From IMG/VR virus record IMGVR_UViG_3300034104_005687, positions 62,001-126,000 of that record: a DNA stretch of 64,000 bases. One strand, 5' to 3'. Of the stretch, positions 11,313-48,836 are shown one piece after another. How positions within the stretch are numbered: position 1 is the first letter of the stretch; each line of letters opens with the position of its first letter. The position numbers and the translations under genes were made by a program. The notes below the pieces were generated by a model. That model was not told where the DNA came from. It searched no databases and saw only the letters and a list, made by a program, of their open reading frames with translations.

Positions 11313-11314
11313 CT

Positions 11315-11953: not shown

Positions 11954-11986
11954 AAGCAACCTGGCAGCAATCATAAATTATATGCA

Positions 11987-19680: not shown

Positions 19681-19696
19681 CGGTAAATAAGTCACC

Positions 19697-23328: not shown

Positions 23329-23340
23329 GGAGAATCAGGA

Positions 23341-25677: not shown

Positions 25678-25705
25678 CAAAAAAGCACTTTCGGGTGCTT
25701 TTTTG
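25678..25705 (+). terminator. Rho-independent terminator after gp23 (possibly bidirectional)
   Basis: CAAAAAAGCACT-TTCG-GGTGCTTTTTTG. Confidence 0.85.
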
Positions 25706-25828: not shown

Positions 25829-26977
25829 TTACACCTTGAACCACGATAGATATTGGCTAACTTTTTTAACAACGCTGGTCCAATCTCCGTAATCAGATTG
25901 TCTAAACAGTCGTGCTGTGGAGTACCAAGGGGAACTGTCGCGATCCAACAACCATCGCCAATCAGTACTGTAGCGTTGGATCATCAACCACAGCGGCCTG
26001 CCCAGTGCACCAGACAAGTGAGCCACAGCAGTGTCCACACTGACCACAACGTCCATGTGCATGATCAGTGCAGCAGTTTCTGCAAAGCTTGACACACAAC
26101 CAGGAAACATTTTGACACCCAACTGTTGAAGTTCAGCAGTTTCTTCTTCAGTGGCATCACACTGTAGATTGATCCATTCGTATTGCGGGTTGTCTTTCAA
26201 CATGCGAACAACATCATCAAACTGCATGGCTTTGTGTTGATTGAGCCATGAGTCTCGACGTCCGCTCCAGCACAGACCTACTCTCATGCGTGTTTTTGGA
26301 CCCAGACGTTCTTGCCACTGTTGAACCAGTGCAGGATCAGCATTGAGATAACTCACAGGTTTTGCCAGTATATCTAGTGTGATGCCCAACACACCGGGTA
26401 TGCTCATGATAGGAACCCAATAATCAAACTCGCCCATGTCGTCGGTATATCTACCTACTTGGTGTATGATATTGCTGCGACTCAGCAGCGGAATCAAACC
26501 GTCAGTGACTTGTAGTTTGACTTTTGCACCCATTTGATGCAAGTTCCACAAAAATCTCACAAACTGAATGTTGTCCCCGTGTCCTTGTTCGCCTACCACA
26601 AGAATGGTTTTGTCTCGTAGATCTTGACCGCGCCAACGTGGCTGCTGATACTTGGGTTCTGTGCCAGCAAGATGCTCGTAGTTCCATCTAGCTTCGTATG
26701 CTGGCCAACCGCGACTGTAGTCGCCTTGCAGCAGATAGGCCACTGCCAAATTGAATTGTGCAGTGACATTGTTGGGTTCCAACACCAATGCATGTTGCAA
26801 AAACGGTACAGATCTAGCAGGATAACCCATTTCTCTGGTTACATTGCCGTAGTTGTTCCAGGCCGCTGCCGATTCTGGATCTTGCACAAACGCCAATGCA
26901 TAGCATTTGAGTGCTTCGTGATATTGGCGATCGGTGCGATGTTGATTGCCTTGTTCAATTAAAAATTCTGTTTCCAT
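25829..26977 (-). CDS. TPR-repeat protein with GT-B (family 9-like) glycosyltransferase domain
   Basis: Start METEF at 26977; TPRs (AWNNYG, AQFNLA), EQGHGDNIQFVRF, VSVDTAVAHLSGALGRP, DWRW...SPWY. Confidence 0.85.
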   Translation of the reverse strand: METEFLIEQGNQHRTDRQYHEALKCYALAFVQDPESAAAWNNYGNVTREMGYPARSVPFLQHALVLEPNNVTAQFNLAVAYLLQGDYSRGWPAYEARWNYEHLAGTEPKYQQPRWRGQDLRDKTILVVGEQGHGDNIQFVRFLWNLHQMGAKVKLQVTDGLIPLLSRSNIIHQVGRYTDDMGEFDYWVPIMSIPGVLGITLDILAKPVSYLNADPALVQQWQERLGPKTRMRVGLCWSGRRDSWLNQHKAMQFDDVVRMLKDNPQYEWINLQCDATEEETAELQQLGVKMFPGCVSSFAETAALIMHMDVVVSVDTAVAHLSGALGRPLWLMIQRYSTDWRWLLDRDSSPWYSTARLFRQSDYGDWTSVVKKVSQYLSWFKV

Positions 26978-27033
26978 ACTGATATTTAATGCGTGCTGCC
27001 TGAGCTTTTGACATTTTCCATAAATATATCTGC

Positions 27034-27092
27034 AACGCAATCGTGCGTTTTATGCTGTTGTTAACACCCTCAGCGTAGCGGCTAGAACCCGC
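27034..27092 (+). promoter_or_regulatory. Structured 5' leader (three adjacent hairpins) downstream of a late promoter
   Basis: TAAATA at 27021-27026; AACGCA/TGCGTT, TATGCTG/CAGCGTA, GCGG/CCGC; AAGGAG RBS follows. Confidence 0.5.
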
Positions 27093-27118
27093 ATCGGACT
27101 TCTTTAAGGAGAAAACAA

Positions 27119-27823
27119 ATGGGTCGTCCTCTAAAAATTAAAAAATCTACTACCAGTGACATCGGTTTCAATCCGTTTAGCGCACTGACCAATCCAATTT
27201 ATCCCAGCGATCCTACCACATTTGATGGTACAGAGTATCTGGGTGTTGTGGGTGGTGCCAATGCTAGCGTAGCTACTGCTGCGTTTCCTGTGGTCAAATG
27301 CCGTGCATTTATTGTAGGCACAGCATCTGAAGCTGATGCATACATCATCACACAAAAAGGCACTACCAAGTATCAAGTGGCCACTGTCACAGCGGTCAAC
27401 GACGAAGACATGGTTGTAGGTCAAGCATATCGTATTTTGAGTGTGGGTACCACTGACTGGGCAGCATGCGGAGCCAGCGATTCAAATGCAGCAGTTGGTG
27501 ATGTATTCACTGCAACTGCAGCGGGTGCAGGCACAGGTACTGTGCAAAACGTAGGTACATGTGTGTTGGCCAACGAAGCTGACACAGCACTCACTGTAGG
27601 CAACATGAACATCACATTCAGCACAGGCGACAGTACTGCACAGTTGATCAGCAAGCTGACCAACAAGTTTGCTCTGGACTACAGCACACCCCCGGTTCGT
27701 TATTTGACCAACTTCTTCAGCGACGAAGGCTATGAAGTCAAGTCAGGTACTACAGGTGCTGCCAACGTAAGTGGACAACAAAACCGCGTGAGTTTGGCAA
27801 TTGTAGAGAACTTTACTTCGTAA
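27119..27823 (+). CDS. Putative virion structural protein
   Basis: 234 aa Thr/Ala/Gly-rich, late promoter and strong RBS. Confidence 0.6.
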   Translation: MGRPLKIKKSTTSDIGFNPFSALTNPIYPSDPTTFDGTEYLGVVGGANASVATAAFPVVKCRAFIVGTASEADAYIITQKGTTKYQVATVTAVNDEDMVVGQAYRILSVGTTDWAACGASDSNAAVGDVFTATAAGAGTGTVQNVGTCVLANEADTALTVGNMNITFSTGDSTAQLISKLTNKFALDYSTPPVRYLTNFFSDEGYEVKSGTTGAANVSGQQNRVSLAIVENFTS

Positions 27824-27838
27824 TATCTACTAATCCTG

Positions 27839-27871
27839 AATCCTCTCAGATACATACTGGGAGGATTTTTT
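27839..27871 (+). terminator. Terminator-like hairpin that also sequesters the next RBS
   Basis: AATCCTCTCAG-ATACATA-CTGGGAGGATT then TTTT and ATG 27872. Confidence 0.65.
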
Positions 27872-28459
27872 ATGAGCAGAGCATTTGTATTGGGCAATGG
27901 CGTAAGCCGACAGCAGGTAGATCTAAACACTCTACGACATCTGGGACAAATCTACGGGTGCAATGCCTTGTACAGAGATTTTGTGCCTGATGTATTGGTC
28001 AGCACAGACACTCCTATCAGCACAGCAATACAACAATCAGGATATTCTGCTCAACACAGAATGTACACTCGCAAGCCTATTCCTGGCCTGGGTGCACAAC
28101 AAGTTCCACAACGTTACTACGGCTACAGTTCTGGACCTATCGCAGTGGGTATAGCAGCCCGAGACCAAAATGTTGCTGTGTACCTAGTGGGGTTTGACAT
28201 GGGTCCCAAAGATCATAATCAATTCAACAATGTGTATGCTGACACAGAATTCTACAAAAAAAGCTCAGCACGCCCGACCTACGCAGGCAACTGGGCTCGA
28301 CAGTTGGCACAAATAATGCAAGATTTCCCCAAAACAAACTTTTTTAGAGTGCAAGGAGAAACCACCGCAGACATACTGGAACTCAATGGTGTGCCCAACC
28401 TTGCGACCATGCCAATGGCAGACTTTCTAAACCGCATAAATAACACAAAGGATCTGTAA
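27872..28459 (+). CDS. Maf/MptE/CstII-like (DUF115-type) putative glycosyltransferase-fold protein
   Basis: AFVLGNG.SR, YGCNALYRDF.PD, SSG..A, VYLVGFD motifs. Confidence 0.55.
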   Translation: MSRAFVLGNGVSRQQVDLNTLRHLGQIYGCNALYRDFVPDVLVSTDTPISTAIQQSGYSAQHRMYTRKPIPGLGAQQVPQRYYGYSSGPIAVGIAARDQNVAVYLVGFDMGPKDHNQFNNVYADTEFYKKSSARPTYAGNWARQLAQIMQDFPKTNFFRVQGETTADILELNGVPNLATMPMADFLNRINNTKDL

Positions 28460-31400
28460 ATGTCTACCTACAAGCGTGCCACCGGTAATATTGTTTTTGA
28501 AACCCTGACTGCTAACTCTTCGGTTTCGTTCATTGGCCCCACAGCCAATGCAGTGTCAGTGGTTATCAACGGCGATCTGAGTGTGAGTGGCAATGCTAGC
28601 TTGACCGGTAACATTGCTGGTGACAAAATATTCAACGGCACAACATCCATTGAAATTCAACAGGCCAACGGCAATGCCAATATCAGTGTGGGTGGTGTCA
28701 GCAATGTGATGGTGATTGCTCCTGATGGTATAAGTGTGGCTGGAAATGCCAACGTAACAGGAAACGCAGTCATTGGCAATCTACAGGTCAACGGGGTTAT
28801 TGCGGGCAACGTTTCTTTTGGAAATTTAAATACCACAGGTAATGTTTCAATTACCAGAGACGCCAGCCTTGGCCAGCCCACGTTTAGATTCAACGATACA
28901 GATACCACAATCACCACAAACACGGTGTTAGGTGCTGTGGAATGGTTTACCAGCGATACTGCACCTGGAGCAAGAGTAACAACAGCAGTTAGATCCATTG
29001 CAACCAGTGCCACTGGAAATGCAAGATATGAAGTTTTGACGTCCACAGATGGTGCAGCAGCCACTGCAAAATTTGCAATTGACGATGTAGGCAATGTTGG
29101 TGTTGCCAACACAGCCCCATTGCATACATTTGCAGTTTCTGGCAACACATATGTCAGTGGTACTGCCACAGTTATTGGCAACGTCACTGGTGGTAATTTT
29201 ATTACTGCAGGGCTAGTAAGTGCCACTGGAAACATTACAAGTGCAGCAAATATTGCTGGTGGTAATTTGGCAATTACTGCCAACGTTGTGGCCAACAATC
29301 TTTCTGCAACCACAGGGATCAGTGCCGGTGCCGGCGGAGTAACTGCCACAGGAAACATCCGTGGTGGAAATTTGGTCAGCGACGGTGTTATTAGTGCTAC
29401 AGGTAACTTAACTACCACTGACATATTTGCTACTACAGTGAGTGCTTCTGGCAACATAACAGGAGCCAACCTCAATGTAGGAGGTGTGGCCAACACAAAT
29501 TCTGTAACTGCTGTGACCACAGTATCAGCAGGCGGAAACGTCACAGGTGGCAATATCAACACAGGTGGCCAAGTCAGTGCAATTGGTAACGTCATAGGTG
29601 CCAATGTTAATTCAACTGGATTAGTTGTTGCAGCAGGCAACGTTGTTGCAGGATCATTTTTTGTTGGCGATGGCGGATTTTTGTCAAACATCACTATTGC
29701 TGCCAATGTGGCAGTGACTCAGTTGGCCAACGGTACTTCAAACTGGACTATTCGTGGCTCAGGTGGCAACATCACTGGTGACGTAGCTGGAACTTCCAAC
29801 GTGGTAATTATTACCACTAACACAATGACTGTGACAGGATTAGTGTCAGTCACAGGCAATGTCACTGGTGGCAACATTACCACTGCAGGCTTGGTCAGCG
29901 CCACAGGCAACATCGACGGTGGTAACGTCAATGCTACCATTGGCAATTTCAACACTGTAATTGGTGTGGCCAACGCCAGCAATTTGACCACAGGCACAGT
30001 GCCCAGCGACCGACTAACTGGCATATATACCATCAACATTTCAGGATATTCTGCCACAGTCAGTGCCGCTGCCCAACCTAATATTACGTCTTTGGGCACG
30101 TTGAGTGCGTTGAGCGTAGCTGGCAATATCACCGGCGGCCTTGTGAGTGCATCTGGCAATATTACAGGTGGCAACTTGTTAACAGGTGGGTTGATTTCGG
30201 CAACTGGCAACATCACGGGTGGTAATTTGTTAGCTGCTGGATTGAGTTTGAGCGGTAATGTGTTGGGTAATTTATTGCCCAGTGCCAACGTCACTTATGA
30301 CTTGGGCAGTGCTACACAAGCCTGGCGAGATTTGTATCTATCAGGTAACAGTATTAAATTGGGCAGTGCAACATTAACTGCCTCAGGCACAGGTCTTAGC
30401 ATGGGCACTGGCAACGTCACCGGTGGCAACTTAACCACCACAGGTATTACATCAACTGCATCATTGACTGCGTCTACCACAATCAGTGCCACTGGCAACA
30501 TCACAGGTGGCAACATCAACACTGGTGGCCTGGTCAGTGCAACAGGCAACATCACTGGTGGTAACTTAATCACCGCAGGATTGATCACTGCCACAGGCAA
30601 CGTGACTGGGAATTACATTCTGGGCAATGGTGCGCTGCTGACTGGAGTTATCACATCTGTGGCCAACATCAACTTTGGCACCAGTAACGTAACTGTGCTC
30701 AGTTCAGGCGGCAATATATCTGTTGGAGTTGGCGGAACACCAAACGTTGTAGTATGGGCAACTACTGGACAGTACACCACAGGTTTGATCAGCGCCACTG
30801 GAAATATACAAACAAGTGGACAATTTATTGGATCTGGTGCAGGACTTACGTCAATACCAGGAGCCAACGTCACAGGTACCGTGCCCAACGCGGCCAACGC
30901 AACCAACGCAACCAACGCAACAAGTGCAACCACTGCAGGTACAGTGACTACCGCAGCGCAGCCCAATATCACAAGTGTGGGTACATTAACATCGTTGAGT
31001 TCAAGTGGCAATATCACTGGCGCAAACATCAACGGCAACGGCTCTGGACTCAGCAGTATTACAGGCGCTAATGTCACAGGTACCGTGGCCAATGCCACAT
31101 TTGCAGTCAGTGCTGGTAGTGCTACTTCAGCTACTACAGCAGGTACTGTGACCTCTGCTGCACAGCCCAATATCACATCAGTTGGCACGTTGAGCGCACT
31201 CAGCGTATCTGGCAACATCACTGGTGGTAATTTGATCACTGCAGGTTTAGTAAGTCTAAGCAGCATTACCAAAACTGGTACCAACGGAGTAGGCAACATT
31301 GGTGCAGCAGGTTCGGCATTTGACACTGTATTTGCTAGAGCAACATCAGCTCTGTATGCTGACTTGGCTGAAAAATTCCTAGCAGATCAACCTTATCAGC

Positions 31401-31729: not shown

Positions 31730-31747
31730 TATCCAAGAAATTTAAAG

Positions 31748-31780
31748 CAAGTCTTCTGGTAAATACAACTAGAGGACTTG
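31748..31780 (+). promoter_or_regulatory. Late promoter inside an RBS-sequestering hairpin
   Basis: CAAGTCTTCTGGT-AAATACA-ACTAGAGGACTTG; TAAATA 31760-31765 in loop, GAGGA in 3' arm. Confidence 0.65.
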
Positions 31781-31787
31781 TATACCT

Positions 31788-33320: not shown

Positions 33321-33322
33321 TC

Positions 33323-34840: not shown

Positions 34841-34896
34841 TGGAGTCAAAACCAAAGCTTTGAAAAAAAATAAATATGTAAAACGGATTTAACCAT

Positions 34897-40800: not shown

Positions 40801-43800
40801 GGTGTAAATGCTGCTGCCTTAACTGGCAACACACTGAGTTCCAATGTGTTGTTCAGCAGTTTGACTAGCGTTGGTACTTTGACTGCACTCAGTGTCAGTG
40901 GCAACGTTGTTGGTGGCAACATCAACACTGCTGGACAAGTTACTGCAACTACATTAGAAACAACTGGCAACGCTGTGATCGGCGGAGACCTAGTGGTCAA
41001 CGGCAACACTATTTCAGTCAACATTGAAAGTCTCAATGTTCAGGATCCAATTATTGGGCTAGGAAGAGGTGCAAACAACGCTCCTCTCACAGTCAACGAC
41101 GGCAAAGATCGTGGCGAACAACTTTGGTACTACAGTACCGCAGAAAATTCTGCTTTTATTGGATATCAAAATGCTTCAGGTAATTTGATTGCAGCCAGCA
41201 ATGTCAGCATTGCCAACGAGATTGTAACAGTCAACAGCTACGGAACATTTGTGGTTGGTAATGTTGTTGCACAAACATTGAGCGCAAGTGGCAATATCAC
41301 TGGCGCCAACATCAATGGCAACGGATCTGGACTCAGCAGCATCACTGGAGCCAATGTCACGGGTACAGTGGGATCAGCAACAACAGCCACAACTGCTGGC
41401 ACAGTGACCACCGCAGCACAACCCAACATTACCTCAGTTGGCACATTAACATCATTGAGTGCGTCAGGCAACATTGATGGGGCTAATATCAACGGCAACG
41501 GATCTGGATTAACATCAATAACTGGCGCCAATGTCACAGGTACTGTGGCCAATGCTACTTTTGCTACTTCAGCTGGATCTGCTACTAGTGCAACCACAGC
41601 AGGTACTGTGACCACAAATGCACAGCCTAACATTACTAGTGTGGGCACATTGACATCATTGAGTTCAAGTGGAAATGTCACTGGCGGTAATATTATCACT
41701 GGCGGGGTAATCTCAGCAACTGGAAATATTACTGGTGCAAACATCAATGGCAACGGATCAGGTCTTAGCTCATTAACTGGTGCAAACGTCACAGGTACTG
41801 TGGCCAATGCTACTTTTGCTACTTCAGCTGGATCTGCTACTAGTGCAACCACAGCAGGTACTGTGACCACAGCAGCACAGCCCAATATCACAAGTGTTGG
41901 TACACTAACATCATTGAGTGCTTCAGGCAATATTGATGGTGCAAATATCAATGGCAATGGATCAGGCCTGACATCAATAACTGGTGCTAATGTCACAGGC
42001 ACTGTAGCCAACGCCACTTTTGCTACATCAGCAGGTAGTGCTACTAGTGCAACCACAGCTGGTACAGTTACCACAGCCGCACAACCCAACATTACATCAG
42101 TTGGTACATTGACATCATTGAGTGCGTCAGGCAACATCACTGGTGCAAACATCAACGGCAATGGATCAGGACTCAGCAGCATCACCGGTGCCAATGTCAC
42201 AGGTACTGTGGCCAATGCTACATTTGCTACTTCAGCAAACAATGCTACTACAGCAGGTACTATAACTGCTAACGCACAACCCAACATTACATCAGTTGGT
42301 ACGTTGATATCATTGAGCTCAAGTGGCAACATCACTGGTGCAAATATCACCACAGCTGGCATCATGACTGCAACTGGCAACATAGTGACCAACGACACAG
42401 TGATTACCAGCAACTTGCAATTGTCAGGATCTATAGTTGGCTCTTTAAACGTAACTGCCAACATTTCTGGTGCAAACGTCAACACCACCAACATAAGTTT
42501 GAGTGGCAACGTTATTACTCCGTTGAGAGTAAGTGGCAACATCACTGGCACCAACATTGAAAGTACCGCTGCAACCACAGTTGGCACTAACCTAACTGTC
42601 AGTGCTGGTAACATTGTGGTAAACACTGGTTTTGCCAGCGTAAATGGCAACGTCACTGGTGGCAACATCAACACTGCAGGACTAGTCAGTGCCACAGGCA
42701 ACATACGTGGTGGCAATATTGTGTCCGCAGGTTCTGTCAGCAGCGCAGGCACAGTTACTGCTGTTGGCAACGTTACTGGCGGAAACATTACTACTGCAGG
42801 CTTGGCCACTGTGACTGGCAATATACAAGGTGGCAATATTGTGTCCGCAGGTTCTGTCAGCAGCACAGGTGCTGTCACAGCTGGCGGCAACGTCACGGGC
42901 AGCAACATTACAACTGCTGGGCTAATCACTGCCACTGGCAACGTCACTGGCAGCAACATAAACACAGCAGGATTGATCAGTGCTGTAGGCAACGTAGTAG
43001 CAGGCAATTTTAGTACTGCAGGATTGATCACTGCGGCTGGTAATATCACAGGCGGCAATGTTATTGCTACCACATTCATTGGAAACTTACAGGGTAACAT
43101 TAGTCTGCCTGGCAGCAACACTCAAGTGTTGTTCAACAACAATGGCATTATAGGCAGTGACTCTGGTTTGGTATACGACAGTATAACCAATGCACTCAGC
43201 GTTGGCGGAACATTTGCCACCAACAATGGCGGCGACGTCAACGTATCAGGTCGTGTCAGCGTTGCAGGCAACATCATTACCAACACAGGCACAGTGAGTG
43301 GTGCTGCCGTTGAATCTGGCAGCACTGTGAGTGCAATTGGCAATGTGGTTGGTGGCAACATCAATACGGGTGGTAGAGTCAGTGCAACAGGCACAATAAC
43401 TGCTGTTGGCAACATCACAGGCGGCAACATTGCCACAGGTGGACTTGTAACTGCCACAGGCAATATCAACACTGGCGCAGGTATCAGTGCTGTTGGCAAC
43501 ATCACAGGCGGCAACGTCATTACCACAGGTGCTGTAATTGGACAACTTGATGTTGGCAATATTGCAGTCACAGGCAACATCAACGTACAAAGTGCTACTG
43601 CAAACACATTTGTCAGCGCAATTGGCAACGTCATAGGTGGCAATGTAAACTCTTTGGGCGTGCTCAGTGCAGTGGGCAACATCAATGGTGCCAATCTCAG
43701 CATAACAGGCCTTGGCAATATTGTGACACTGGAAATTGTGACACTGGCCAATGTCAAGAGTACTGAAATTTCAAACAGCACAACCAGCGGAGCATTCAAA

Positions 43801-44130
43801 GTAGCAGGCGGCGCAGGCATCGGCGGCAATGTGTATGCTGGTGCGTTCTACACCAGCGGAATTTTGAGTGCTGGAGGCAACGTCACTGGTGCCAACATAG
43901 CCACAGGTGGTGTAATCACTGCCACAGGCAACATCACAGGTGGCAACTTAAACGCCACAGGATTGAGTTTAAGCGGCAATGTTGTCAGCACACTCAATAC
44001 AACATCGGCAATCAACACAACTGGCAACATAACAGCAGGCAATGCGTCAGTTTCAGGAACCATAAATATTGCTGGACAGCAGGCGGCCACAGTAAGTGAC
44101 GCAGTAGCACTGGCAATTGCATTAGGATAA
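34897..44130 (+). CDS. Giant repetitive tail fibre/adhesin-like virion protein (3077 aa)
   Basis: LNFP.NP..NQ.Y....KTW.WNG..W N-terminus; very many GN(I/V)(T/S)G units; QPNITSVGTL and YGNANVAAYLPTY modules; ends AVALAIALG. Confidence 0.8.
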   Translation: MPLNFPLNPVLNQSYTFAGKTWIWNGSGWALKTLGAINNIPVGNVTPSTGGFTALTATSVSATGNVTGGNVVTAGQVSAGGNVTGGNVVTAGQVSAGGNVTGGNVVTAGRVSATGNVSGNFILGNGSLLTGITTTYGNANVAAYLPTYTGNLNPGNLVSSGVVSGANLITTGQVSAAGNVTGQFFIGNGSLLTGIATSYGNANVAAYLPTYTGNLNPGNLTSNGNVSGANLITAGQVSATGNVTGNFILGNGSLLTGITTTYGNANVAAYLPTYTGNLNPGNLTSNGNVSGANLITAGQISAAGNVTGNYILGNGALLTGLPATYGNANVAAYLPTYSGNIGANNITATGLISTTGNVQGAFILGDGGFLTNVTVSSNVAVSQIANGTTVLSVAGANGNLVATVNGVSNVAVFTPTGVEFAGNLTPVANVTYNLGSPTRAWNDLYLSGNTIYLNDSTISANTTAFTLTTPLGGTAIIEGGGTIKAYGNSNVAEYLPTYTGNLASLQGNVTTTANISGQYILGNGAFLTGITAGTSYANANVADYLASGTVTSNIITSGNISGGNIIGNGSGLTSITGANVTGTVANATFATSAGSATSATTAGTVTTNAQPNITSVGTLTALSVGTGNITGGNLLLSGAIIDSAQLDLQTSAANANIVLTPNGTGNVNLGRMSASGNITASTYFGSGAGLTSIPGANITGTVANATFATSAGSATTAGTVTTNAQPNITSVGTLTALSVSGNIVSGAGVGGNISGANVVTANLFTGTLSTAAQPNITSVGTLTSLSVTGNINGGNVNSTFFGNGAGLTSITGANVTGTVANATFATSAGTVAANAQPNITSVGILIDLSASGNVTAGNLTVGSGTITGGNINGANFNGNVAFGAGTIGGSGNISGGNLNATGLISATGNITGNNIFGNIQGTTGDILNVTSTNLTVTNISAPNPGNAVNIGAGGNNNLVVSNVLVQVQNVPLSVAGNVTGGNVLTGGLISATGNITGGNLSVTGLIGATGNVAGGNLITGGLITATGAITSTANVVANNVNVTQSVTGTVLSATGNITGGNVNTAGLISATGAVNSGSVSATGNVVGGNVNTAGLISAGGNVTGGNVSTGGLITATGNVTGGNVNTAGLVSATGNVAGGNITTQGIVSASGNIVTSGFFVGNFAGNITANIVVPGANTQVLFNTNGNADAVAGLTYNKDSNVLAVLGVLSAQGNVVANNAVISGLTTVTGNVIGGNVVTAGQVSATGNVTGNYFIGNGSLLTGIAGSYGNTEVAAYLPTYTGSLPNLTGVVTTTANVTGGNIIATVDVIAQTGRFVGNGSGLTNIVAANVTGTVANATSAVTAGTVTTAAQPNITSVGTLTSLSSSGNITGANINGNGSGLTSITGANVTGTVANATFATSAGSATSATTAGTVTTAAQPNITSVGTLTSLSATGNITGGNLNATGLSLSGNVVSAINTVANITTTANIAGGFFIGNGSLLTGLAATYGNANVVANLAALGSNPILSTANISGANINASGIVSATGNINGGNINVTGNIVDTGALTISTGSDGNIALAPNGTGIVTASGAFSAVGNITGGNLNATGLSLSGNVISAINTTANITTTANVTAGNISTSGSLGNITGANVISSVTLSATGNVVGGNVTTTGLITASGNITSAGNIAANFFIGNGSLLTGISAGGTPTSIVNGTSNVAVALNGNTTIGVAGTTVGTFHSGGAIVVGTLAAGNLTGTLTTAAQPNITSVGTLTSLSSSGNITGANINGNGSGLSSITGANVTGTVANATSAVSATTAGTVTTAAQPNITSVGTLTSLSSSGNITGANINGNGSGLTSITGANVTGTVAAATTAGTVTTNAQPNITSVGTLSILNVTGNIVSGGGTGGNISGANVITANLFTGTLTTAAQPNITSVGTLSSLSVSGNVTGGNLSLSGNVIGPLNSTANVNTTGNITAAYYFGDGSQLTGVTASGVNAAALTGNTLSSNVLFSSLTSVGTLTALSVSGNVVGGNINTAGQVTATTLETTGNAVIGGDLVVNGNTISVNIESLNVQDPIIGLGRGANNAPLTVNDGKDRGEQLWYYSTAENSAFIGYQNASGNLIAASNVSIANEIVTVNSYGTFVVGNVVAQTLSASGNITGANINGNGSGLSSITGANVTGTVGSATTATTAGTVTTAAQPNITSVGTLTSLSASGNIDGANINGNGSGLTSITGANVTGTVANATFATSAGSATSATTAGTVTTNAQPNITSVGTLTSLSSSGNVTGGNIITGGVISATGNITGANINGNGSGLSSLTGANVTGTVANATFATSAGSATSATTAGTVTTAAQPNITSVGTLTSLSASGNIDGANINGNGSGLTSITGANVTGTVANATFATSAGSATSATTAGTVTTAAQPNITSVGTLTSLSASGNITGANINGNGSGLSSITGANVTGTVANATFATSANNATTAGTITANAQPNITSVGTLISLSSSGNITGANITTAGIMTATGNIVTNDTVITSNLQLSGSIVGSLNVTANISGANVNTTNISLSGNVITPLRVSGNITGTNIESTAATTVGTNLTVSAGNIVVNTGFASVNGNVTGGNINTAGLVSATGNIRGGNIVSAGSVSSAGTVTAVGNVTGGNITTAGLATVTGNIQGGNIVSAGSVSSTGAVTAGGNVTGSNITTAGLITATGNVTGSNINTAGLISAVGNVVAGNFSTAGLITAAGNITGGNVIATTFIGNLQGNISLPGSNTQVLFNNNGIIGSDSGLVYDSITNALSVGGTFATNNGGDVNVSGRVSVAGNIITNTGTVSGAAVESGSTVSAIGNVVGGNINTGGRVSATGTITAVGNITGGNIATGGLVTATGNINTGAGISAVGNITGGNVITTGAVIGQLDVGNIAVTGNINVQSATANTFVSAIGNVIGGNVNSLGVLSAVGNINGANLSITGLGNIVTLEIVTLANVKSTEISNSTTSGAFKVAGGAGIGGNVYAGAFYTSGILSAGGNVTGANIATGGVITATGNITGGNLNATGLSLSGNVVSTLNTTSAINTTGNITAGNASVSGTINIAGQQAATVSDAVALAIALG

Positions 44131-44133
44131 AAC

Positions 44134-44466
44134 ATGGCAAACACATTCAAACGTAAACTAAGTAGAGGAATAGGTAATTCTGCTATTCAGGTAGGAACTT
44201 ACACAGTAGGCGCAAATGTTACCACAGTGGTAATTGGACTTACTGTGACCAACACTTCGGGCAGTGCAATTTCGGCCAATGTTTTTCTCTACAACGGTGC
44301 GGCCAACACAAGCATTGTTTCCACAGCGCCAATCAGTTCAGGTTCCAGTTTGGTTGTGGTTGGCGGCGATCAAAAGGTTGTGTTAGAAACAGGAGACAGC
44401 ATCTACGTTCAAAGCAGTGCAGCATCCAGTGTTGATGTTGTGATGAGCATTATGGAAATCACATAA
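44134..44466 (+). CDS. Small virion structural protein
   Basis: 110 aa beta-rich, MANTFK...KVVLETGD.I...DVVMSIMEIT. Confidence 0.65.
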   Translation: MANTFKRKLSRGIGNSAIQVGTYTVGANVTTVVIGLTVTNTSGSAISANVFLYNGAANTSIVSTAPISSGSSLVVVGGDQKVVLETGDSIYVQSSAASSVDVVMSIMEIT

Positions 44467-47400
44467 TGAGCGGCTATCTTGGTCTTGATCCCAACACACA
44501 GTTACTGAATACCAGTACTCAGTTCTTCAGCGGAAACAGTGCGGCCACTCAGTTTACACTGTCTCGAGCAGTAGCATCAGCATCTGATCTGGATGTACTG
44601 ATAGGCAACGTCCCTCAAAGACCAACGGTTGATTTCTCTGCTCAAAACACCACACTGTTGTTTACTAGTGCTCCAGCAACTGGTACCAACAACATCACAG
44701 TTACGTTTAGAGCTGGTGCTCTTAACTCATTGACACTACAGGCCACTGCATTTCCATCAGGAACAGTTGGTGCACCTGGACTATATTCTGTAGCTGCAAA
44801 CAATACTGGTTTGTATTGGCCTACTGCCACTGACATGGCTGTTACTGTGGCTGGCACTGAGCGAGTTAACTTCAGCAGCAATTCTATATCTACTAGCAAT
44901 GTCACGGGTGCACTCACTGTATCCGGCGGTGTAGGCGTGACTGGCAACATCTATACCAGTGGTATTGTCAATGTCACAAACACTACACAAAGTACCAGTG
45001 TTGCTTCGGGAGCATTACAAGTTGCTGGCGGTGCAGGCATAGTTGGCAACGTTAACGTTGGCGGCGACATTACCTGTGTGGGCGATTTTACTGTAAACGG
45101 TGTATTCCGAACCACCGGAACTGACAGCCTGGAAGTCAACGATCCATTTATTTTCTTGGCCAACGCCAACCCTGGTGACAGCTTTGATTCGGGTATTATT
45201 ACTGAATACGACGATGGAGTCACACGATATGCTGGTATTTTTCGAGATATCACAGACGATCAATGGAAATTGTTTGGTAACTTAACAGTCAAGCCCGGCA
45301 CCACAGTGGACACAGGTGATGCCAGTTTCAACTACAACAGTTTGATTGTGGCTGGGCTATCGGCCACAGGCAACGTAACAGGTACATATCTTTTGGGCAA
45401 TGGTAGTTTGCTGACAGGTATATCTACCGACACCACCAACATCAGCAATGGCAACAGCGCAGTTGTTATACCATCCATAAACGGCAACATACTGTCCAAC
45501 GTCAACGGCATAACCATTGTCAATGTGTCATCAACTGGCGCCACAGTAACTGGTGCAGTAAATTCCACAACACTCAGTGCATCAGGCAACGTCACTGGTG
45601 GCAACTTGATCACTGGTGGTGCAGTAGTAGCAACCGGTGCAATATCTGGCTCTGTTGTTAGCACAACAGGCAACGTCACTGGTGGCAACATCAATACCAG
45701 CGGACTTGTAAGCGCAACTGGTGCTGTGAATTCTGGCAGTGTTACGGCCACAGGCAACGTAGTAGGTGGCAACATCAATACAGGTGGTTTAATCAGTGCT
45801 ACAGGTGCCATAACTGGTGCTGCTATCACTGGTACAAGTCTAAACTTGAGCACCGGCAACATCACAGCAGGCAACCTAAATGCCGCTGGTATTAGCCTAA
45901 CTGGCAACATTGTGTCTGCGGTCAACGCAACCAGCACTATTGTTGCTGGATCTACTATAAGTGCCGTGGGCAACATCACAGGTGGCAACATCAACACAGC
46001 AGGCTTGGTTTCGGCAACTGGTGCTGTAAATGCAGGCAGTGTTGCAGCAGGCACCACAATCAGTGCAGCAGGCAACATCACTGGCGGCAACTTAATTACA
46101 GGTGGGTTGATCACTGCTACAGGCAACTTGGTCACAGGAGCCAACGTAATTGCCACAGGATTTGGTACTTTTACTGGCAACATTACAGGTGGCAACTTGA
46201 TCACCGGCGGTCTGATCTCAGCAACGGGTGCTATTACAGGCGCTGATATCTCAGGCACAACTATCAGTGGTTCAGGCAACGTCACCGGAGGCAACGTCAA
46301 CACAGCTGGTATTGTCAGCGCCACAGGCAACATTGTGGGCGGCAACATCAGCACACCCGGCTTGATCACTGCCACAGGATCAATTCAAGCCACTGGTAAT
46401 ACCAACGGTGGCAACTTAAATGCGGTGAGTGCTGTAGCAGCAGGCACAACAGTAAGTGCAGGCGGCAATATCACAGGCGGTAACATATTAACCACTGGAT
46501 TGGTCAGTGCAGGTGGCACAGTGAGTGCAACTGGTACTATCACAGGTGGCAACATAGCCACTGCAGGCACAATAAGCAGCACAGGCAACATAGTCAGTGC
46601 AGGTAATGTGAGTGGTGGCAACGTGTTGGCCACACAAGCAGTGATTGGAGCCATAGTCAGCAGTACAGGCAATGTTACTGCCACAGGCAACGTCAGTGCA
46701 GGTAATGTGATTGCCACAGGTTTGAGCCTGATTGGCAACGTGCTGGGAGCATTGGCTACTACAGGCAACATCACCAGCGGCAATTTGATCACAACAGGGT
46801 TGATTACAGCAACTAGCAACATCACTGGTGGTAATATAAACACTGCTGGATCAATGTCAGCCACTGGCACGGTCAATGGTAATGTTTTAAGATCAACTAA
46901 CTCAGCAGGCGACGAAGGAGGAGAGATTCAACTAGCCCTTGCAGCCGCAAACACTACATTGAGTGGTGGTGTAAACATAGACGTTTATCAGAATAGAATA
47001 CGATTCTTTGAAACTGGTGGCACAGCACGCGGCGTGTTTATTGATTTGGCAACTGCTGCTGCAGGTGCGGCAACTCCGTTGAATCCAGCTACCCCAACAC
47101 AGATTGTCAATGGCTCTACTAATTTTAGTTCTATCCTAAATGCAAACCTTACAGCTACGGTAGCAGGAACTTCAAACGTAGTAGTAATTGCATCCACTGG
47201 ACAATTTGTTACAGGATTGATCAGTGCCACAGGCAACATCACTGGTGCCAATATCAACGGCAACGGATCAGGATTGAGTGCAATTACTGGGGCCAACGTC
47301 ACAGGTACTGTGGCCAACGCTACTTTTGCTACTTCTGCTGGATCGGCTACTACCGCAACAAGTGCAACCACAGCTGGTACTGTGACCACAGCAGCACAGC

Positions 47401-48836
47401 CCAACATTACTTCAGTTGGTACATTAACTGCACTAGCAGTGACCGGTAACACTACATCAAGCAACTTTGTTGGTACACTAAATGGATCAGGTGCCAACGT
47501 TACCAGCATCAGTGCTACCAACATTAGTTCTGGTACACTGGAACAAGCTAGATTGGCCAATGCCGCAGTAACACTGGGCGGTACAGCACTCACACTTGGT
47601 GCAACTGTGACCACTGTGGTTGGTTTGACTAGTGTGACATCAACTACATTTGTGGGTGCATTGACTGGAGCAGCTACATCAGCCACAACGGCAGGTACTG
47701 TGACAACAGCAGCACAACCCAACATAACATCTGTTGGTACATTGTCAGGGTTGACGGTAACTGCAACCATCACAGGTAATATAACAGGATCAGCTGGTAC
47801 TGCAACAAGTGCTACTACAGCTGGTACTGTGACAACAGCAGCACAACCCAACATTACTTCAGTTGGTACACTGTCAGGGTTGACTGTAACTGCAACTATT
47901 ACAGGTAATATATCAGGTTCAGCAGCTACTGCAACCAGTGCTACTTCAGCTACCACAGCAGGTACTGTGACCACAGCAGCACAACCCAACATAACCTCAG
48001 TTGGTACGTTGACTGCATTGGCAGTGACTGGTAATACTACATCAGGAAACTTTGTTGGCACATTGAATGGATCAGGAGCCAACGTTACCAGTATCAGTGC
48101 TACCAACATTTCTAGTGGCACACTGGCTCAGGCTAGATTGGCTAACGCTAGCATAACTGTTAATGGTACTGCAATTGCACTAGGTGCATCAGGCACAATC
48201 ACAGCCACTGCCACAGGTACACTCACAATTGGCACAGGCCTCGGCGGTACCAGTTACAATGGCAGCACGGGCGTTACTATTACCAACACAGGTGTAACTG
48301 CTTTAACAGGTGGCGGCGGCATCACCGTAAACGCAAGCACAGGTTCTATCACGTTGGGTTCTACTGCAACTAGCGCAAACACCGCAGGTGCAATTGTTGC
48401 ACGTGGGGCAAGTGGAGAATTTAGTGCTGGAGTAATTACAGCAACTGCAACTTCTGCACGTTATGCTGACTTGGCAGAAAATTATTCTGCTGATGCTGTG
48501 TACGAACCAGGCACTGTGTTGATATTTGGTGGCACAGCAGAAGTCACTGTTGCCAACGCAGCAGGTGACACAAGAATTGCAGGTGTAGTGTCTACGGATC
48601 CAGCGCACTTGATGAATTCTACCATTGACTGCGAACATCCAGTGGCAGTTGCGTTGACTGGTCGAGTTCCTACCCGAGTAACAGGCACAGTACGCAAAGG
48701 AGACATGATGGTAGCTGCTGGCAACGGCCAAGCACAAGCATGTGCAACACCTGCATTGGGGTCTGTGATTGGTAAAGCATTGGCAGACTTTGATGGAACC
48801 AGTGGTGTAATTGAAGTTGTAGTAGGAAGATTATAA
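44466..48836 (+). CDS. Tail fibre-like protein with C-terminal YADLAE domain
   Basis: 1456 aa; same repeat types and C-terminal domain as 28460 gene. Confidence 0.8.
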   Translation: MSGYLGLDPNTQLLNTSTQFFSGNSAATQFTLSRAVASASDLDVLIGNVPQRPTVDFSAQNTTLLFTSAPATGTNNITVTFRAGALNSLTLQATAFPSGTVGAPGLYSVAANNTGLYWPTATDMAVTVAGTERVNFSSNSISTSNVTGALTVSGGVGVTGNIYTSGIVNVTNTTQSTSVASGALQVAGGAGIVGNVNVGGDITCVGDFTVNGVFRTTGTDSLEVNDPFIFLANANPGDSFDSGIITEYDDGVTRYAGIFRDITDDQWKLFGNLTVKPGTTVDTGDASFNYNSLIVAGLSATGNVTGTYLLGNGSLLTGISTDTTNISNGNSAVVIPSINGNILSNVNGITIVNVSSTGATVTGAVNSTTLSASGNVTGGNLITGGAVVATGAISGSVVSTTGNVTGGNINTSGLVSATGAVNSGSVTATGNVVGGNINTGGLISATGAITGAAITGTSLNLSTGNITAGNLNAAGISLTGNIVSAVNATSTIVAGSTISAVGNITGGNINTAGLVSATGAVNAGSVAAGTTISAAGNITGGNLITGGLITATGNLVTGANVIATGFGTFTGNITGGNLITGGLISATGAITGADISGTTISGSGNVTGGNVNTAGIVSATGNIVGGNISTPGLITATGSIQATGNTNGGNLNAVSAVAAGTTVSAGGNITGGNILTTGLVSAGGTVSATGTITGGNIATAGTISSTGNIVSAGNVSGGNVLATQAVIGAIVSSTGNVTATGNVSAGNVIATGLSLIGNVLGALATTGNITSGNLITTGLITATSNITGGNINTAGSMSATGTVNGNVLRSTNSAGDEGGEIQLALAAANTTLSGGVNIDVYQNRIRFFETGGTARGVFIDLATAAAGAATPLNPATPTQIVNGSTNFSSILNANLTATVAGTSNVVVIASTGQFVTGLISATGNITGANINGNGSGLSAITGANVTGTVANATFATSAGSATTATSATTAGTVTTAAQPNITSVGTLTALAVTGNTTSSNFVGTLNGSGANVTSISATNISSGTLEQARLANAAVTLGGTALTLGATVTTVVGLTSVTSTTFVGALTGAATSATTAGTVTTAAQPNITSVGTLSGLTVTATITGNITGSAGTATSATTAGTVTTAAQPNITSVGTLSGLTVTATITGNISGSAATATSATSATTAGTVTTAAQPNITSVGTLTALAVTGNTTSGNFVGTLNGSGANVTSISATNISSGTLAQARLANASITVNGTAIALGASGTITATATGTLTIGTGLGGTSYNGSTGVTITNTGVTALTGGGGITVNASTGSITLGSTATSANTAGAIVARGASGEFSAGVITATATSARYADLAENYSADAVYEPGTVLIFGGTAEVTVANAAGDTRIAGVVSTDPAHLMNSTIDCEHPVAVALTGRVPTRVTGTVRKGDMMVAAGNGQAQACATPALGSVIGKALADFDGTSGVIEVVVGRL

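What the first reader, a model, noticed from the sequence alone, without database searches (positions are those of the whole stretch)
25829..48836. Possible virion-fibre glycosylation system: two GT-like genes beside fibres saturated with N-x-S/T sequons
Seen: a TPR plus GT-B protein with a late-type promoter and a Maf/CstII-like gene flank the start of the fibre module; the fibres consist largely of GNIT, GNVT, ANVT, PNIT, NIS units and are Ser/Thr-rich. Known: cytoplasmic HMW1C-type enzymes glycosylate N-x-S/T in adhesins, Maf proteins glycosylate flagellin, and TPRs recruit protein substrates. Inference: the phage may glycosylate its fibres, with the radical SAM/SDR/SGNH genes tailoring the sugars. 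Asn ladders of beta-structured fibres are a simpler competing explanation.
Basis: inference. Interest (0 to 1): 0.6.

Follow-up and report, generated by a model that had tools for sequence, protein, structure and literature searches.

The report
Late glycosyltransferase pair beside phage fibres
A common freshwater jumbo phage carries two late-expressed sugar-transferase-like genes next to its giant tail-fibre genes, so it may sugar-coat its own particle, but the many N-x-S/T motifs in the fibres look like a structural repeat rather than glycosylation sites.

Summary
The window is part of a 349 kb T4-like jumbo phage from lake metagenomes. Between the major capsid gene and the fibre genes lie two enzyme-like genes. 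One is a TPR plus GT-B protein (25829-26977, minus strand) whose catalytic domain is GT9 (heptosyltransferase)-like. The other is a 195-aa protein (27872-28459) whose model best matches the central domain of the Maf flagellin glycosyltransferase. A TAAATA late-promoter-like box lies 5-8 nt before the TPR-GT start in 34 of 34 orthologous loci. Three fibres (1089, 3077 and 1456 aa) hold 1.6-1.8 times more N-x-S/T than composition predicts (z 5-8), and the excess is specific to the +2 spacing.

- No HMW1C/GT41-type N-glycosyltransferase is present.
- As I recall, the protein-modifying relatives of both enzymes are O-linking.
- Half of the sequons sit in six repeat words built on G-N-[IV]-T.
- Sequon positions are not better conserved than other Asn or Thr.
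- Relatives without the TPR-GT keep the enrichment.
- The radical SAM/SDR island is strain-specific; sugar dehydratase, aminotransferase and carbamoyltransferase genes lie elsewhere in the genome.

Best reading: an accessory late module that probably O-glycosylates virion proteins, with the Ser/Thr-rich fibres as prime candidates. This is untested.

The parts
25678..25705 (.). Hairpin flanked by A-run and T-run between the convergent capsid gene (ends 25651) and the TPR-GT gene (ends 25829); terminator-like in both directions
   Evidence: Terminator scan, 11-pair stem; sequence read
25829..26977 (-). TPR plus GT9-like GT-B glycosyltransferase, 382 aa (the ORF runs to a TTG at 27040, but orthologues start at this ATG)
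   Evidence: Pfam TPR and Glyco_transf_9; TIGR02193 heptosyltransferase I weak hit at residues 273-350; AF2 model pLDDT 88.7; GT9 structures Z 17.7-18.9 and TibC Z 17.1; over 120 orthologues at 68-99% identity
26983..26988 (-). TAAATA late-promoter-like box, 5 nt upstream of the TPR-GT start codon
   Evidence: Present at this place in 34 of 34 orthologous loci while flanking bases vary; 26-fold enriched upstream of genes genome-wide
27021..27026 (+). TAAATA box on the opposite strand, 92 nt upstream of the 234-aa gene; its reverse complement (TATTTA) is seen at the matching place in most of the 34 orthologous loci
27119..27823 (+). 234-aa protein of unknown function, precedes the Maf-like gene in every related locus that carries it; possibly structural or a partner of the enzyme
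   Evidence: No Pfam, PHROG, NCBIfam or phage tblastn hit; 1848 homologues, 79-100% identical among the best 120; adjacency in related loci, where tblastn identity spans 37-95%
27872..28459 (+). 195-aa MptE-like/Maf-like core domain: candidate nonulosonate-type glycosyltransferase, or alternatively a pyrophosphokinase-like enzyme
   Evidence: Foldseek Maf, CstII, Cst-I; VIA wide Maf Z 12.1, HPPK 9.3, Cst-I 9.2; Atlas nearest named cluster PF01973 at 0.90; present in 14 of 15 related records
28460..31729 (+). Fibre protein, 1089 aa, with 17-aa repeats and a conserved C-terminal domain shared with fibre and baseplate proteins of PA5oct-like, Atu_ph07 and Campylobacter phages
   Evidence: 50 sequons against 27 expected
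31788..33320 (+). 510-aa fibre/baseplate connector-like protein; not sequon-enriched
   Evidence: PHROG 677 baseplate wedge tail fibre connector, weak; sequon ratio 0.65
33260..34840 (+). Subtilase (peptidase S8) gene inside the fibre module; not found in any of 82 related loci
   Evidence: Pfam PF00082 at 5.6e-33; no tblastn hit in the related loci
34897..44130 (+). Giant fibre protein, 3077 aa, with 17-aa, 63-aa and 68-aa repeat families
   Evidence: 169 sequons against 103 expected
44134..44466 (+). 110-aa fibre-associated small protein, conserved after the giant fibre in relatives
44466..48836 (+). Fibre protein, 1456 aa, with 17-aa and 43-aa repeats and the same C-terminal domain as the 1089-aa fibre
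   Evidence: 59 sequons against 35 expected
48837..49226 (+). 129-aa protein resembling tail-fibre N-terminal segments
   Evidence: PHROG 18673 at 1e-20

Best explanation
The module between the capsid gene and the fibre genes is an accessory, late-expressed protein-glycosylation module. It consists of a TPR-fused GT9-like glycosyltransferase and a minimal Maf-like enzyme, the latter always paired with a conserved 234-aa protein.

Proposed mechanism (inferred, not shown):
1. The TPR domain recruits a folded or nascent virion protein, as the TPR domains of FlmG and Maf-1 recruit flagellin.
2. The GT-B domain transfers a sugar from a nucleotide donor. ADP-heptose is the family's usual donor.
3. 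The Maf-like enzyme may add a second sugar.
4. Donors come from the host pool and may be tailored by the phage's own dehydratase, aminotransferase and carbamoyltransferase genes, which lie elsewhere in the genome.

The most likely acceptors are Ser/Thr residues of virion proteins. The three giant fibres, with 25-28% Ser+Thr, are the prime candidates.

The N-x-S/T excess in the fibres is a by-product of structural repeat words (G-N-[IV]-T-G, Q-P-N-I-T-S, A-N-V-T-G, G-N-G-S-G). It is not a set of selected N-glycosylation sites.

Shown: the gene identities at family and fold level, the synteny, the late-type box and the sequon statistics. Inferred: enzymatic activity, donor, acceptor and linkage.
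For: Enzyme identity:
- GT9 Pfam hit above its cut-off.
- GT-B domain at Z 17-19 to WaaC, WaaF and a Veillonella GT9, and Z 17.1 to the protein heptosyltransferase TibC.
- Invariant G-x-x-G-H-G-D and V-D-T-x-x-x-H-L segments across 24 orthologues. From memory, these correspond to the catalytic Asp and the nucleotide-sugar motif of WaaC.
- Whole-protein Foldseek hits led by TPR-containing protein glycosyltransferases SPINDLY and OGT.
- Maf-like fold of the 195-aa protein.

Timing:
- TAAATA box before the start in 34 of 34 orthologues; it is shared with the portal gene and three fibre-module genes.

Placement:
- The order capsid gene, TPR-GT, 234-aa gene, 195-aa gene, fibres is kept down to 56% enzyme identity. 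The TPR-GT is in 13 of 15 long related records and the Maf-like gene in 14 of 15.
- Independent phages carry TPR-GT homologues in structural modules. A podovirus has it after the capsid gene with an FkbM methyltransferase and a galT-like gene. Cyanophages BUCT-ZZ01 and S-SRM01 have it next to fibre or baseplate genes.

Sugar supply:
- Three NAD-dependent epimerase/dehydratase-family genes, a DegT aminotransferase, a carbamoyltransferase, a GT2 and a weak GT1-like gene lie elsewhere in the genome. DegT orthologues at 59-64% identity occur in three relatives, one of them complete; the other complete genome has a 31% homologue.

Precedent:
- FlmG and Maf-1 use TPR domains to bind flagellin (PMC7591256; bioRxiv 10.1101/2023.12.03.569772).
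- Mycobacteriophage virions are glycosylated (Freeman 2023, cited in PMC12619734).

Sequons as structure:
- Half of the 278 sequons lie in a narrow motif class, [GAP]-N-[IVA]-[TS]-[GSTF], whose commonest words are GNITG, GNVTG, PNITS, ANVTG and ANATF.
- There is no extra conservation of sequon positions, and Thr-to-Ser exchange at sequon +2 is 6.6% against 10.6% elsewhere.
- The observed/expected ratio is 1.43 in loci lacking the TPR-GT and 1.53 in the rest.
Against: - There is no biochemical or proteomic evidence; the phage is known only from metagenomes.
- The TPR-GT is dispensable. Four related loci have homing-endonuclease-like ORFs in its place.
- Homologues of the Maf-like protein in pelagiphage HTVC008M lie between uvsY and uvsW, not by fibres.
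- The Maf-like fold is shared with pyrophosphokinases (MptE HPPK Z 9.3, thiamine pyrophosphokinase Z 8.2). The 195-aa protein has no invariant His, the residue that serves as catalytic base in CstII as I recall.
- The phage has no NeuB, no CMP-sugar synthetase, no GmhA-type heptose gene and no nucleotidyltransferase, so every donor would have to start from the host.
- Gene position alone is weak evidence in a phage where much of the genome is structural.
- The +2-specific enrichment is stronger than in the T4 fibres (0.4-1.25). Fibre-module proteins next to TPR-GT homologues in two cyanophages are also enriched (1.3-1.8). A link between sequons and the enzymes is therefore not excluded.
Confidence: 0.4

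Rival explanations
1. The fibres are N-glycosylated on Asn of N-x-S/T sequons in the cytoplasm by the neighbouring enzymes, as HMW1C does for HMW1 adhesin. The sequon excess reflects selection for glycan sites.
For: - Sequon excess of 1.6-1.8 times, specific to the +2 offset and shared by 163 related fibre ORFs.
- T4 fibres, not known to be glycosylated, are not enriched, while fibre-module proteins beside TPR-GT homologues in two cyanophages are.
- In sequons the middle residue is mostly Ile or Val, so in a beta-strand Asn and Thr would face away from it, possibly to solvent (the orientation is inference).
Against: - No GT41/HMW1C-type domain in the genome.
- The catalytic domain is GT9-like. 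From memory, no GT9 or Maf-type enzyme is known to make N-links.
- Sequon Asn and Thr are conserved like other Asn and Thr, and Ser replaces sequon Thr less often than other Thr.
- The enrichment persists without the TPR-GT.
- A PA5oct-like gp10-type protein is equally enriched (1.93) in a phage without either enzyme.
Confidence: 0.06
2. The two enzymes are real glycosyltransferases but act on something other than the virion: host envelope glycans, a host protein such as flagellin or a pilin, or phage DNA. The fibres are unmodified, and the position beside the fibre genes is an accident of a variable junction that also collects homing endonucleases.
For: - The junction is variable. HNH- and GIY-YIG-like ORFs replace the TPR-GT in four loci, and a SegE-like gene lies nearby in another.
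- GT9 enzymes are classically lipopolysaccharide heptosyltransferases.
- The Maf-like homologue is not next to fibres in pelagiphages.
- Bacterial relatives are giant proteins with 3-6 TPR-GT modules, clustered with FkbM methyltransferases and TPR-GT41 proteins rather than with phage genes.
Against: - The late-type box is conserved in 34 of 34 loci.
- The fused TPR domain points to a protein acceptor.
- In three other phage lineages the homologue again sits beside capsid, fibre or baseplate genes.
- Modification of the host surface or of DNA is usually an early or lysogenic function (general knowledge).
Confidence: 0.3
3. One or both proteins are not glycosyltransferases here. The 195-aa protein would be an MptE-like pyrophosphokinase or another nucleotide-binding enzyme. 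The TPR-GT would serve as a TPR chaperone or assembly factor for the very long fibres, with a degenerate sugar-transferase domain.
For: - The MptE HPPK and thiamine pyrophosphokinase folds score close behind Maf.
- There is no Pfam hit and no invariant His in the 195-aa protein.
- Fibre genes of T4-like phages commonly need dedicated chaperones (general knowledge).
Against: - Maf stands about 3 Z units above the kinases and covers 166 of 195 residues.
- The GT9 nucleotide-sugar segment and the N-terminal G-D motif of the TPR-GT are invariant over 24 orthologues, which argues for retained catalysis.
Confidence: 0.15

Closest known systems
FlmG-type flagellin O-glycosyltransferase of Caulobacter (PMC7591256)
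   Same: An N-terminal TPR domain followed by a C-terminal GT-B domain of about 280 aa. The enzyme is soluble and cytoplasmic, and its acceptor is a repetitive, exported filament protein. In FlmG the TPR domain binds the acceptor.
   Different: Homology to FlmG itself was not tested, because no sequence was at hand. FlmG is 596 aa with a longer TPR region and uses pseudaminic acid. The phage enzyme's catalytic domain is closest to ADP-heptose-using GT9 enzymes, and the phage has no nonulosonate genes.
Maf flagellin glycosyltransferases and GT42 sialyltransferases (CstII, Cst-I)
   Same: The 195-aa protein's model matches the Maf central domain best (Z 12.1), then Cst-I. Maf enzymes need a TPR domain or an adaptor for acceptor choice (bioRxiv 10.1101/2023.12.03.569772). 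Here a TPR protein and a conserved small protein are the neighbours.
   Different: Only the core domain is present: 195 aa against about 630 aa for Maf. There is no Pfam PF01973 hit and no invariant His. There are no CMP-sugar pathway genes in the phage. The fold is shared with pyrophosphokinases.
Bacterial autotransporter heptosyltransferases TibC/Aah (GT9-like protein O-heptosyltransferases)
   Same: A GT9-like GT-B fold (TibC Z 17.1 over 244 residues). From memory, they modify Ser in beta-helical repeat adhesins in the cytoplasm before export, a close functional analogy to a repeat fibre.
   Different: From memory, TibC has no TPR domain and forms an iron-containing dodecamer. Those features were not examined here.
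HMW1C/ApNGT cytoplasmic N-glycosyltransferase (GT41)
   Different: No GT41 domain is found in the genome, and the catalytic domain is GT9-like. This is not a member of that family.
Virion glycosylation in mycobacteriophages (Freeman et al. 2023, as cited in PMC12619734)
   Same: Phage-encoded glycosyltransferase genes lie beside structural genes, and glycans are attached to virion proteins.
   Different: From memory, those are different enzyme families in actinobacteriophages, and the glycans sit on C-terminal tails of capsid and tail-tube proteins. Nothing has been demonstrated for this phage.

Membership tests
GT9 (heptosyltransferase family, Pfam PF01075) | Sequence match to the family model above the curated cut-off | tested here: met
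   28.8 bits against a cut-off of 22, but over 34 residues only; 29.5 bits in the genome scan; weak TIGR02193, TIGR02201, RfaQ and RfaC hits far below their equivalog cut-offs
GT9 (heptosyltransferase family, Pfam PF01075) | GT-B fold closest to solved GT9 enzymes | tested here: met
   3tov Z 18.9, WaaF Z 18.1, WaaC Z 17.7 and TibC Z 17.1, each with 234-250 residues aligned at rmsd 3.0-3.3
GT9 (heptosyltransferase family, Pfam PF01075) | Catalytic Asp in the N-terminal G-D motif and the D-T/S-G...H nucleotide-sugar segment | tested here: inconclusive
   Invariant G-H-G-D (D135) and V-D-T...H-L (D315, T316, H320) in 24 orthologues. Equivalence to WaaC residues rests on my memory of the WaaC sequence, not on a residue-level superposition.
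GT9 (heptosyltransferase family, Pfam PF01075) | Use of ADP-heptose as donor | not testable with these tools
   No GmhA-type heptose gene in the phage; the donor would have to come from the host
HMW1C/NGT-type N-glycosyltransferase (GT41) | GT41 catalytic domain (Pfam PF13844) | tested here: not met
   No match at E up to 0.1 anywhere in the 349 kb genome. Foldseek hits to OGT and SPINDLY have TM 0.23-0.34 and reflect the shared TPR plus GT-B layout.
HMW1C/NGT-type N-glycosyltransferase (GT41) | Acceptor sequons maintained by selection | tested here: not met
   Sequon Thr kept 59.5% against 53.2% for other Thr; Thr to Ser 6.6% against 10.6%; sequon Asn kept 66% against 62% (26 related alignments, not independent)
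Maf / MptE-like (Pfam PF01973) | Sequence match to the family model | tested here: not met
   No Pfam or NCBIfam hit at E up to 0.01. Only the nearest named Atlas cluster carries PF01973, in 34% of its members, at score 0.90.
Maf / MptE-like (Pfam PF01973) | Fold of the Maf central domain | tested here: met
   5mu5 residues 272-513, Z 12.1, 166 aligned, rmsd 3.4, about 3 Z units above the next hit; Foldseek E 1.8e-4
Maf / MptE-like (Pfam PF01973) | Full Maf architecture with flanking domains, and linked CMP-nonulosonate synthesis genes | tested here: not met
   The protein is 195 aa. No NeuB or CMP-sugar synthetase in the genome.
GT42 sialyltransferase (CstII-like) | Catalytic His general base (from memory, His188 in CstII) | tested here: not met
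   No invariant His in 24 orthologues. The caveat is that no residue-level structural alignment was available.
FlmG-class TPR protein glycosyltransferase | N-terminal TPR acceptor-binding domain plus C-terminal GT-B domain | tested here: met
   Model shows helices 3-99 as TPR and a GT-B domain at 117-382. The FlmG architecture is described in PMC7591256.
FlmG-class TPR protein glycosyltransferase | Sequence homology to FlmG and binding of the acceptor by the TPR domain | not tested
Phage virion glycosylation systems (mycobacteriophage type) | Glycan detected on virion proteins and dependent on the phage glycosyltransferases | not testable with these tools
   Metagenome-only phage. Only the gene position beside structural genes is shared.

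The most novel reading that the evidence does not exclude
An abundant clade of freshwater T4-like jumbo phages glycosylates its giant, repeat-built tail fibres during late infection. It would use a previously uncharacterised class of protein glycosyltransferase (a TPR domain fused to a GT9-like domain, related to a very large bacterial family of multi-module TPR-GT proteins) together with a minimal Maf-like enzyme. This would be the first fibre glycosylation system in phages of Gram-negative-type hosts. It would also give a functional handle on tens of thousands of unannotated bacterial TPR-GT9 proteins.
Probability: 0.25. Interest if true: 0.75.

Novelty: new variant of a known kind. Interest (0 to 1): 0.45.

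Why it matters
Virion glycosylation is established for mycobacteriophages and, as I recall, for giant eukaryotic viruses. I found no report of it for the receptor-binding fibres of tailed phages.

If these enzymes decorate the fibres, glycans could shape host recognition, resistance to proteases, or stickiness in lake water. This would apply to a phage lineage found in at least 24 lake metagenome studies.

The TPR-GT9 catalytic domain belongs to a family of more than 38,000 sequence clusters. A tractable phage member with an obvious candidate substrate next door would be a good entry point.

The work also gives a practical caution. A strong, offset-specific N-x-S/T excess can arise from structural repeat words. 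It should not be read as evidence for N-glycosylation without the matching enzyme.

Tried and rejected
- Complex prediction of TPR-GT with the 234-aa and 195-aa proteins.
- Burial of Asn in fibre models. This could not be tested.
- Sequence searches of the fibres against solved structures found nothing useful. tblastn of a 501-aa repeat stretch against the phage collection found nothing, perhaps because of low-complexity masking.
- The 234-aa protein as the 'Maf-like' gene: rejected. It has no family, phage or Atlas lead.
- Serratia phage BF, the closest isolate by capsid DNA, as a control for the fibre module: not syntenic, so of little use.
- An exact T4 late promoter (TATAAATA) at the TPR-GT: absent. 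It was replaced by the shorter TAAATA box analysis.
- A sigma-70-type promoter for the TPR-GT in the window: none above chance.
- The radical SAM/SDR island as part of the system: rejected as strain-specific.
- The moraphage paper (PMC12619734) as a description of this clade: rejected, because it concerns a different, non-T4-like lineage.

Full report
**Context.** The window is bases 62001-126000 of a 349 kb virus record that is 97% complete. It has a T4-like head module: portal 19697-21493, prohead protease 22690-23328 and gp23-type capsid protein 24455-25651. The nearest isolates by DNA are distant jumbo phages of the Eneladusvirus kind, and only over patches of the capsid gene. The exact stretch carrying the two enzyme genes occurs in lake-water metagenomes from 24 listed studies. 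Hundreds of close homologues of each gene exist in metagenomes, several on contigs of 200-347 kb. This is therefore an abundant freshwater jumbo-phage clade.

**Gene map of the finding.**
- After the capsid gene comes a hairpin terminator (25678-25705).
- The convergent gene 25829-26977 (minus strand) follows.
- Then, divergently on the plus strand, come a 234-aa gene (27119-27823), a 195-aa gene (27872-28459) and a 1089-aa fibre (28460-31729).
- Next are a 510-aa connector-like protein (31788-33320), a subtilase (33260-34840) and a 3077-aa fibre (34897-44130).
- The module ends with a 110-aa protein, a 1456-aa fibre (44466-48836), a 129-aa fibre-N-terminus-like protein and a 1322-aa virion protein.

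**The TPR glycosyltransferase.** Pfam finds several TPR families and Glyco_transf_9 above its cut-off, though over a short segment. NCBIfam gives weak heptosyltransferase I/III, RfaQ and RfaC hits over residues 273-387. Orthologues are 382 aa and begin at the ATG at 26977.
- The AF2 model (pLDDT 88.7) has six TPR helices followed by two Rossmann-like halves.
- The GT-B part (residues 117-382) aligns best to GT9 enzymes: Z 18.9 to a Veillonella GT9, 18.1 to WaaF, 17.7 to WaaC and 17.1 to the protein heptosyltransferase TibC.
- Foldseek on the whole chain is led by SPINDLY, OGT and XcOGT. That reflects the shared layout of TPR plus GT-B (TM only 0.23-0.34).
- Two segments are invariant in 24 orthologues: G-H-G-D near residue 135 and V-D-T...H-L near residue 315. 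From memory, they correspond to the catalytic Asp13 region and the ADP-heptose-binding segment of WaaC. I mark that equivalence as recalled, not tested.
- The catalytic domain alone has 38,311 cluster representatives at E up to 0.001. Many are giant proteins with three to six tandem copies. Two looked up lie next to FkbM-type methyltransferases and TPR proteins; one of them also lies next to a TPR-GT41 protein.
- No GT41 domain exists in the phage genome.

**The Maf-like protein.**
- Sequence libraries are silent. PHROGs knows it only as an unnamed family.
- The Atlas's nearest named cluster carries PF01973 (MptE-like) at score 0.90.
- The model (pLDDT 85) matches Maf from Magnetospirillum, CstII and Cst-I by Foldseek.
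- In a search independent of Foldseek, Maf's central domain scores Z 12.1 over 166 residues. MptE HPPK (9.3), Cst-I (9.2), SteA (8.6) and thiamine pyrophosphokinase (8.2) follow.

The fold assignment is thus sound, but the clan contains both glycosyltransferases and pyrophosphokinases. The protein is only the core domain and has no invariant His. Homologues occur in pelagiphages HTVC008M and Mosig; in HTVC008M the gene lies between uvsY and uvsW, not by fibres.

**Late expression.** An exact TATAAATA is rare in the window (4 sites). The shorter TAAATA lies within 45 nt upstream of 71 of 385 predicted genes, against 0.7% of random 45-mers. In the window it precedes the 1136-aa gene at 16270, the portal gene and the fibre genes at 28460, 31788 and 34897. 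It lies 5-8 nt before the TPR-GT start codon in all 34 orthologous loci where the start is covered, while the flanking bases vary. A second box faces the 234-aa gene. I take this as good evidence that the enzyme gene belongs to the late class.

**Synteny and co-occurrence.** In 82 related loci the order capsid, TPR-GT (reverse), 234-aa, 195-aa, fibre, connector is nearly universal.
- Of 15 long related records, 13 have the TPR-GT (56-82% identity) and 14 have the Maf-like gene, always 1.5-2 kb apart.
- Four loci (L039, L056, L059, L087) have the capsid, 234-aa and 195-aa genes but no TPR-GT. In two of them the gap holds an HNH-like or GIY-YIG-like ORF, and in the other two only short ORFs.
- The TPR-GT is therefore an accessory gene at a variable junction. 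The 234-aa and 195-aa genes form the tighter pair.
- Homologues in other phages are also placed among structural genes. In a 44 kb podovirus the homologue follows the capsid gene and precedes an FkbM methyltransferase and a galT-like gene.
- In cyanophage BUCT-ZZ01 it follows a tail fibre and a BNR protein.
- In S-SRM01 it follows baseplate and long-tail-fibre genes and precedes a 2OG oxygenase, with a sulfotransferase and a glycosyltransferase a few genes further on.
- In a Rhizobium phage the domain is part of a 1177-aa glycosyltransferase beside tail genes.

**Sugar supply.** Their best families are B12-dependent methyltransferase-like and maturase-like, with nothing sugar-specific. The 214-aa ORF has no SGNH or other hit.
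- The island is absent from both near-complete relatives.
- Better candidates lie outside the window. Genome positions 9317-10285 (epimerase/dehydratase) and 10239-11342 (DegT aminotransferase) form one pair.
- Further candidates are 19002-20489 (carbamoyltransferase), 22899-23864 (epimerase/dehydratase) and 311383-312327 (epimerase/dehydratase), the last with a weak GT1-like gene upstream and a truncated DegT downstream. A GT2 lies at 343564-344031.
- DegT orthologues at 59-64% identity occur in three relatives, one of them complete (G004). The other complete genome (G003) and G006 have only 31-32% homologues.
- There is no NeuB, CMP-sugar synthetase, GmhA-type isomerase or sugar nucleotidyltransferase.

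**The sequons.** The three fibres carry 50, 169 and 59 N-x(not P)-S/T. Composition shuffles give 27, 103 and 35 (z 5.1, 8.1, 4.9). They are the three most enriched proteins of the genome.
- The excess is specific to offset +2 (1.66 times; other offsets 0.36-1.19). The same profile holds in 163 related fibre ORFs (1.51 times).
- N-x-T is enriched 1.91 times and N-x-S only 1.22 times. The middle residue is Ile or Val in 60% of sequons, and Asn follows Gly in 45% of cases.
- Half of the 278 sequons fall in the motif class [GAP]-N-[IVA]-[TS]-[GSTF]. Its commonest words are GNITG, GNVTG, PNITS, ANVTG and ANATF; GNGSG is also frequent.
- These words belong to repeat families of 17 aa and of 40-68 aa that are also visible as DNA tandem repeats of 51, 120, 129, 189 and 204 nt.
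- After collapsing identical contexts the excess remains, but smaller (34-39% against 25.6%).

**Tests of the glycosylation reading of the sequons.**
1. In 26 alignments to related fibres (45-90% identity), Thr at sequon +2 is kept in 59.5% of cases against 53.2% for other Thr. It is replaced by Ser less often (6.6% against 10.6%). Sequon Asn is kept in 66% against 62%. Selection for sequons predicts preferential Thr/Ser exchange, and that is not seen. These alignments are related to each other and repeats are hard to align, so this is indicative only.
2. Fibres in the four loci without the TPR-GT have a ratio of 1.43, against 1.53 in the others.
3. Controls: T4 gp34-37 give 0.4-1.25. A PA5oct-like gp10-type protein in a phage with neither enzyme gives 1.93. 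Fibre-module proteins beside TPR-GT homologues in two cyanophages give 1.3-1.8. The sample is too small to decide, so a residual link cannot be excluded.
4. The enzyme class needed for N-linking is absent.

**Conclusion.** The best-supported mechanism is late, cytoplasmic O-glycosylation of virion proteins by a TPR-targeted GT9-like enzyme, perhaps helped by a Maf-like enzyme. The Ser/Thr-rich fibres are the most plausible acceptors.

I give this 0.4. The main rival, at 0.3, is that the enzymes serve another target and merely sit at a variable junction. The N-linked sequon model gets 0.06. The sequon excess is best explained by structural repeat words.

Noticed in passing
window 33260-34840: A subtilase (peptidase S8) gene sits inside the fibre module between the connector-like gene and the 3077-aa fibre. 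None of 82 related loci has a homologue, so it looks like a strain-specific insertion. It could be a fibre-processing or host-surface protease.
   Followed up: partly
window 7728-12421: A low-GC (39%) island holds a B12-binding radical SAM methyltransferase-like gene, an SDR, a second radical SAM (maturase/SPASM-like), a 214-aa orphan and a SegE GIY-YIG endonuclease. It is absent from the two near-complete relatives. Its product is unknown.
   Followed up: partly
whole genome; window examples upstream of 16270, 19697, 21825, 28460, 31788, 34897: A TAAATA box within 45 nt upstream of 71 of 385 predicted genes (26-fold over random) looks like this clade's late promoter core. It is a shortened form of the T4 TATAAATA.
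   Followed up: partly
L039 446-1213, L059 1645-2406, L003 14475-15191: The junction between the capsid gene and the 234-aa gene collects homing-endonuclease-like genes (HNH, GIY-YIG, SegE) in relatives. In two of the four loci that lack the TPR-GT, such a gene occupies its place.
   Followed up: partly
related loci L011-L090: The 234-aa protein comes in two sharply different forms: about 83-95% or about 37-61% identical to the window's copy. Meanwhile the flanking 195-aa protein varies smoothly. This allelic dimorphism fits a surface-exposed or partner-specific protein.
   Followed up: no
genome 312284-312844 (outside the window; L009 6302-6904): A DegT-type aminotransferase next to an epimerase/dehydratase is truncated. 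It shows two in-frame TGA stops in the genome scan and is probably a decaying duplicate of the intact gene at genome 10239-11342.
   Followed up: no
genome 8278-8970 and 314074-314790 (outside the window): ThyX-type thymidylate synthase and GTP cyclohydrolase I genes are present. The latter often marks 7-deazaguanine DNA modification pathways in phages.
   Followed up: no
L091, L092 (bacterial metagenome contigs): Bacterial relatives of the catalytic domain are giant proteins with up to six TPR plus GT9-like modules. They cluster with FkbM-type methyltransferases, and in one case with a TPR-GT41 protein. This very large family appears to be uncharacterised.
   Followed up: partly
window 30797-31729 and 48400-48836: The C-terminal domain of about 160 aa in the 1089-aa and 1456-aa fibres is shared with proteins of PA5oct-like Pseudomonas phages (annotated baseplate wedge/tail pin or virion structural protein) and with hypothetical proteins of Atu_ph07, Sinorhizobium phage Phosso and Campylobacter CP21-like phages. 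It may be a common trimerisation or receptor-binding module.
   Followed up: partly
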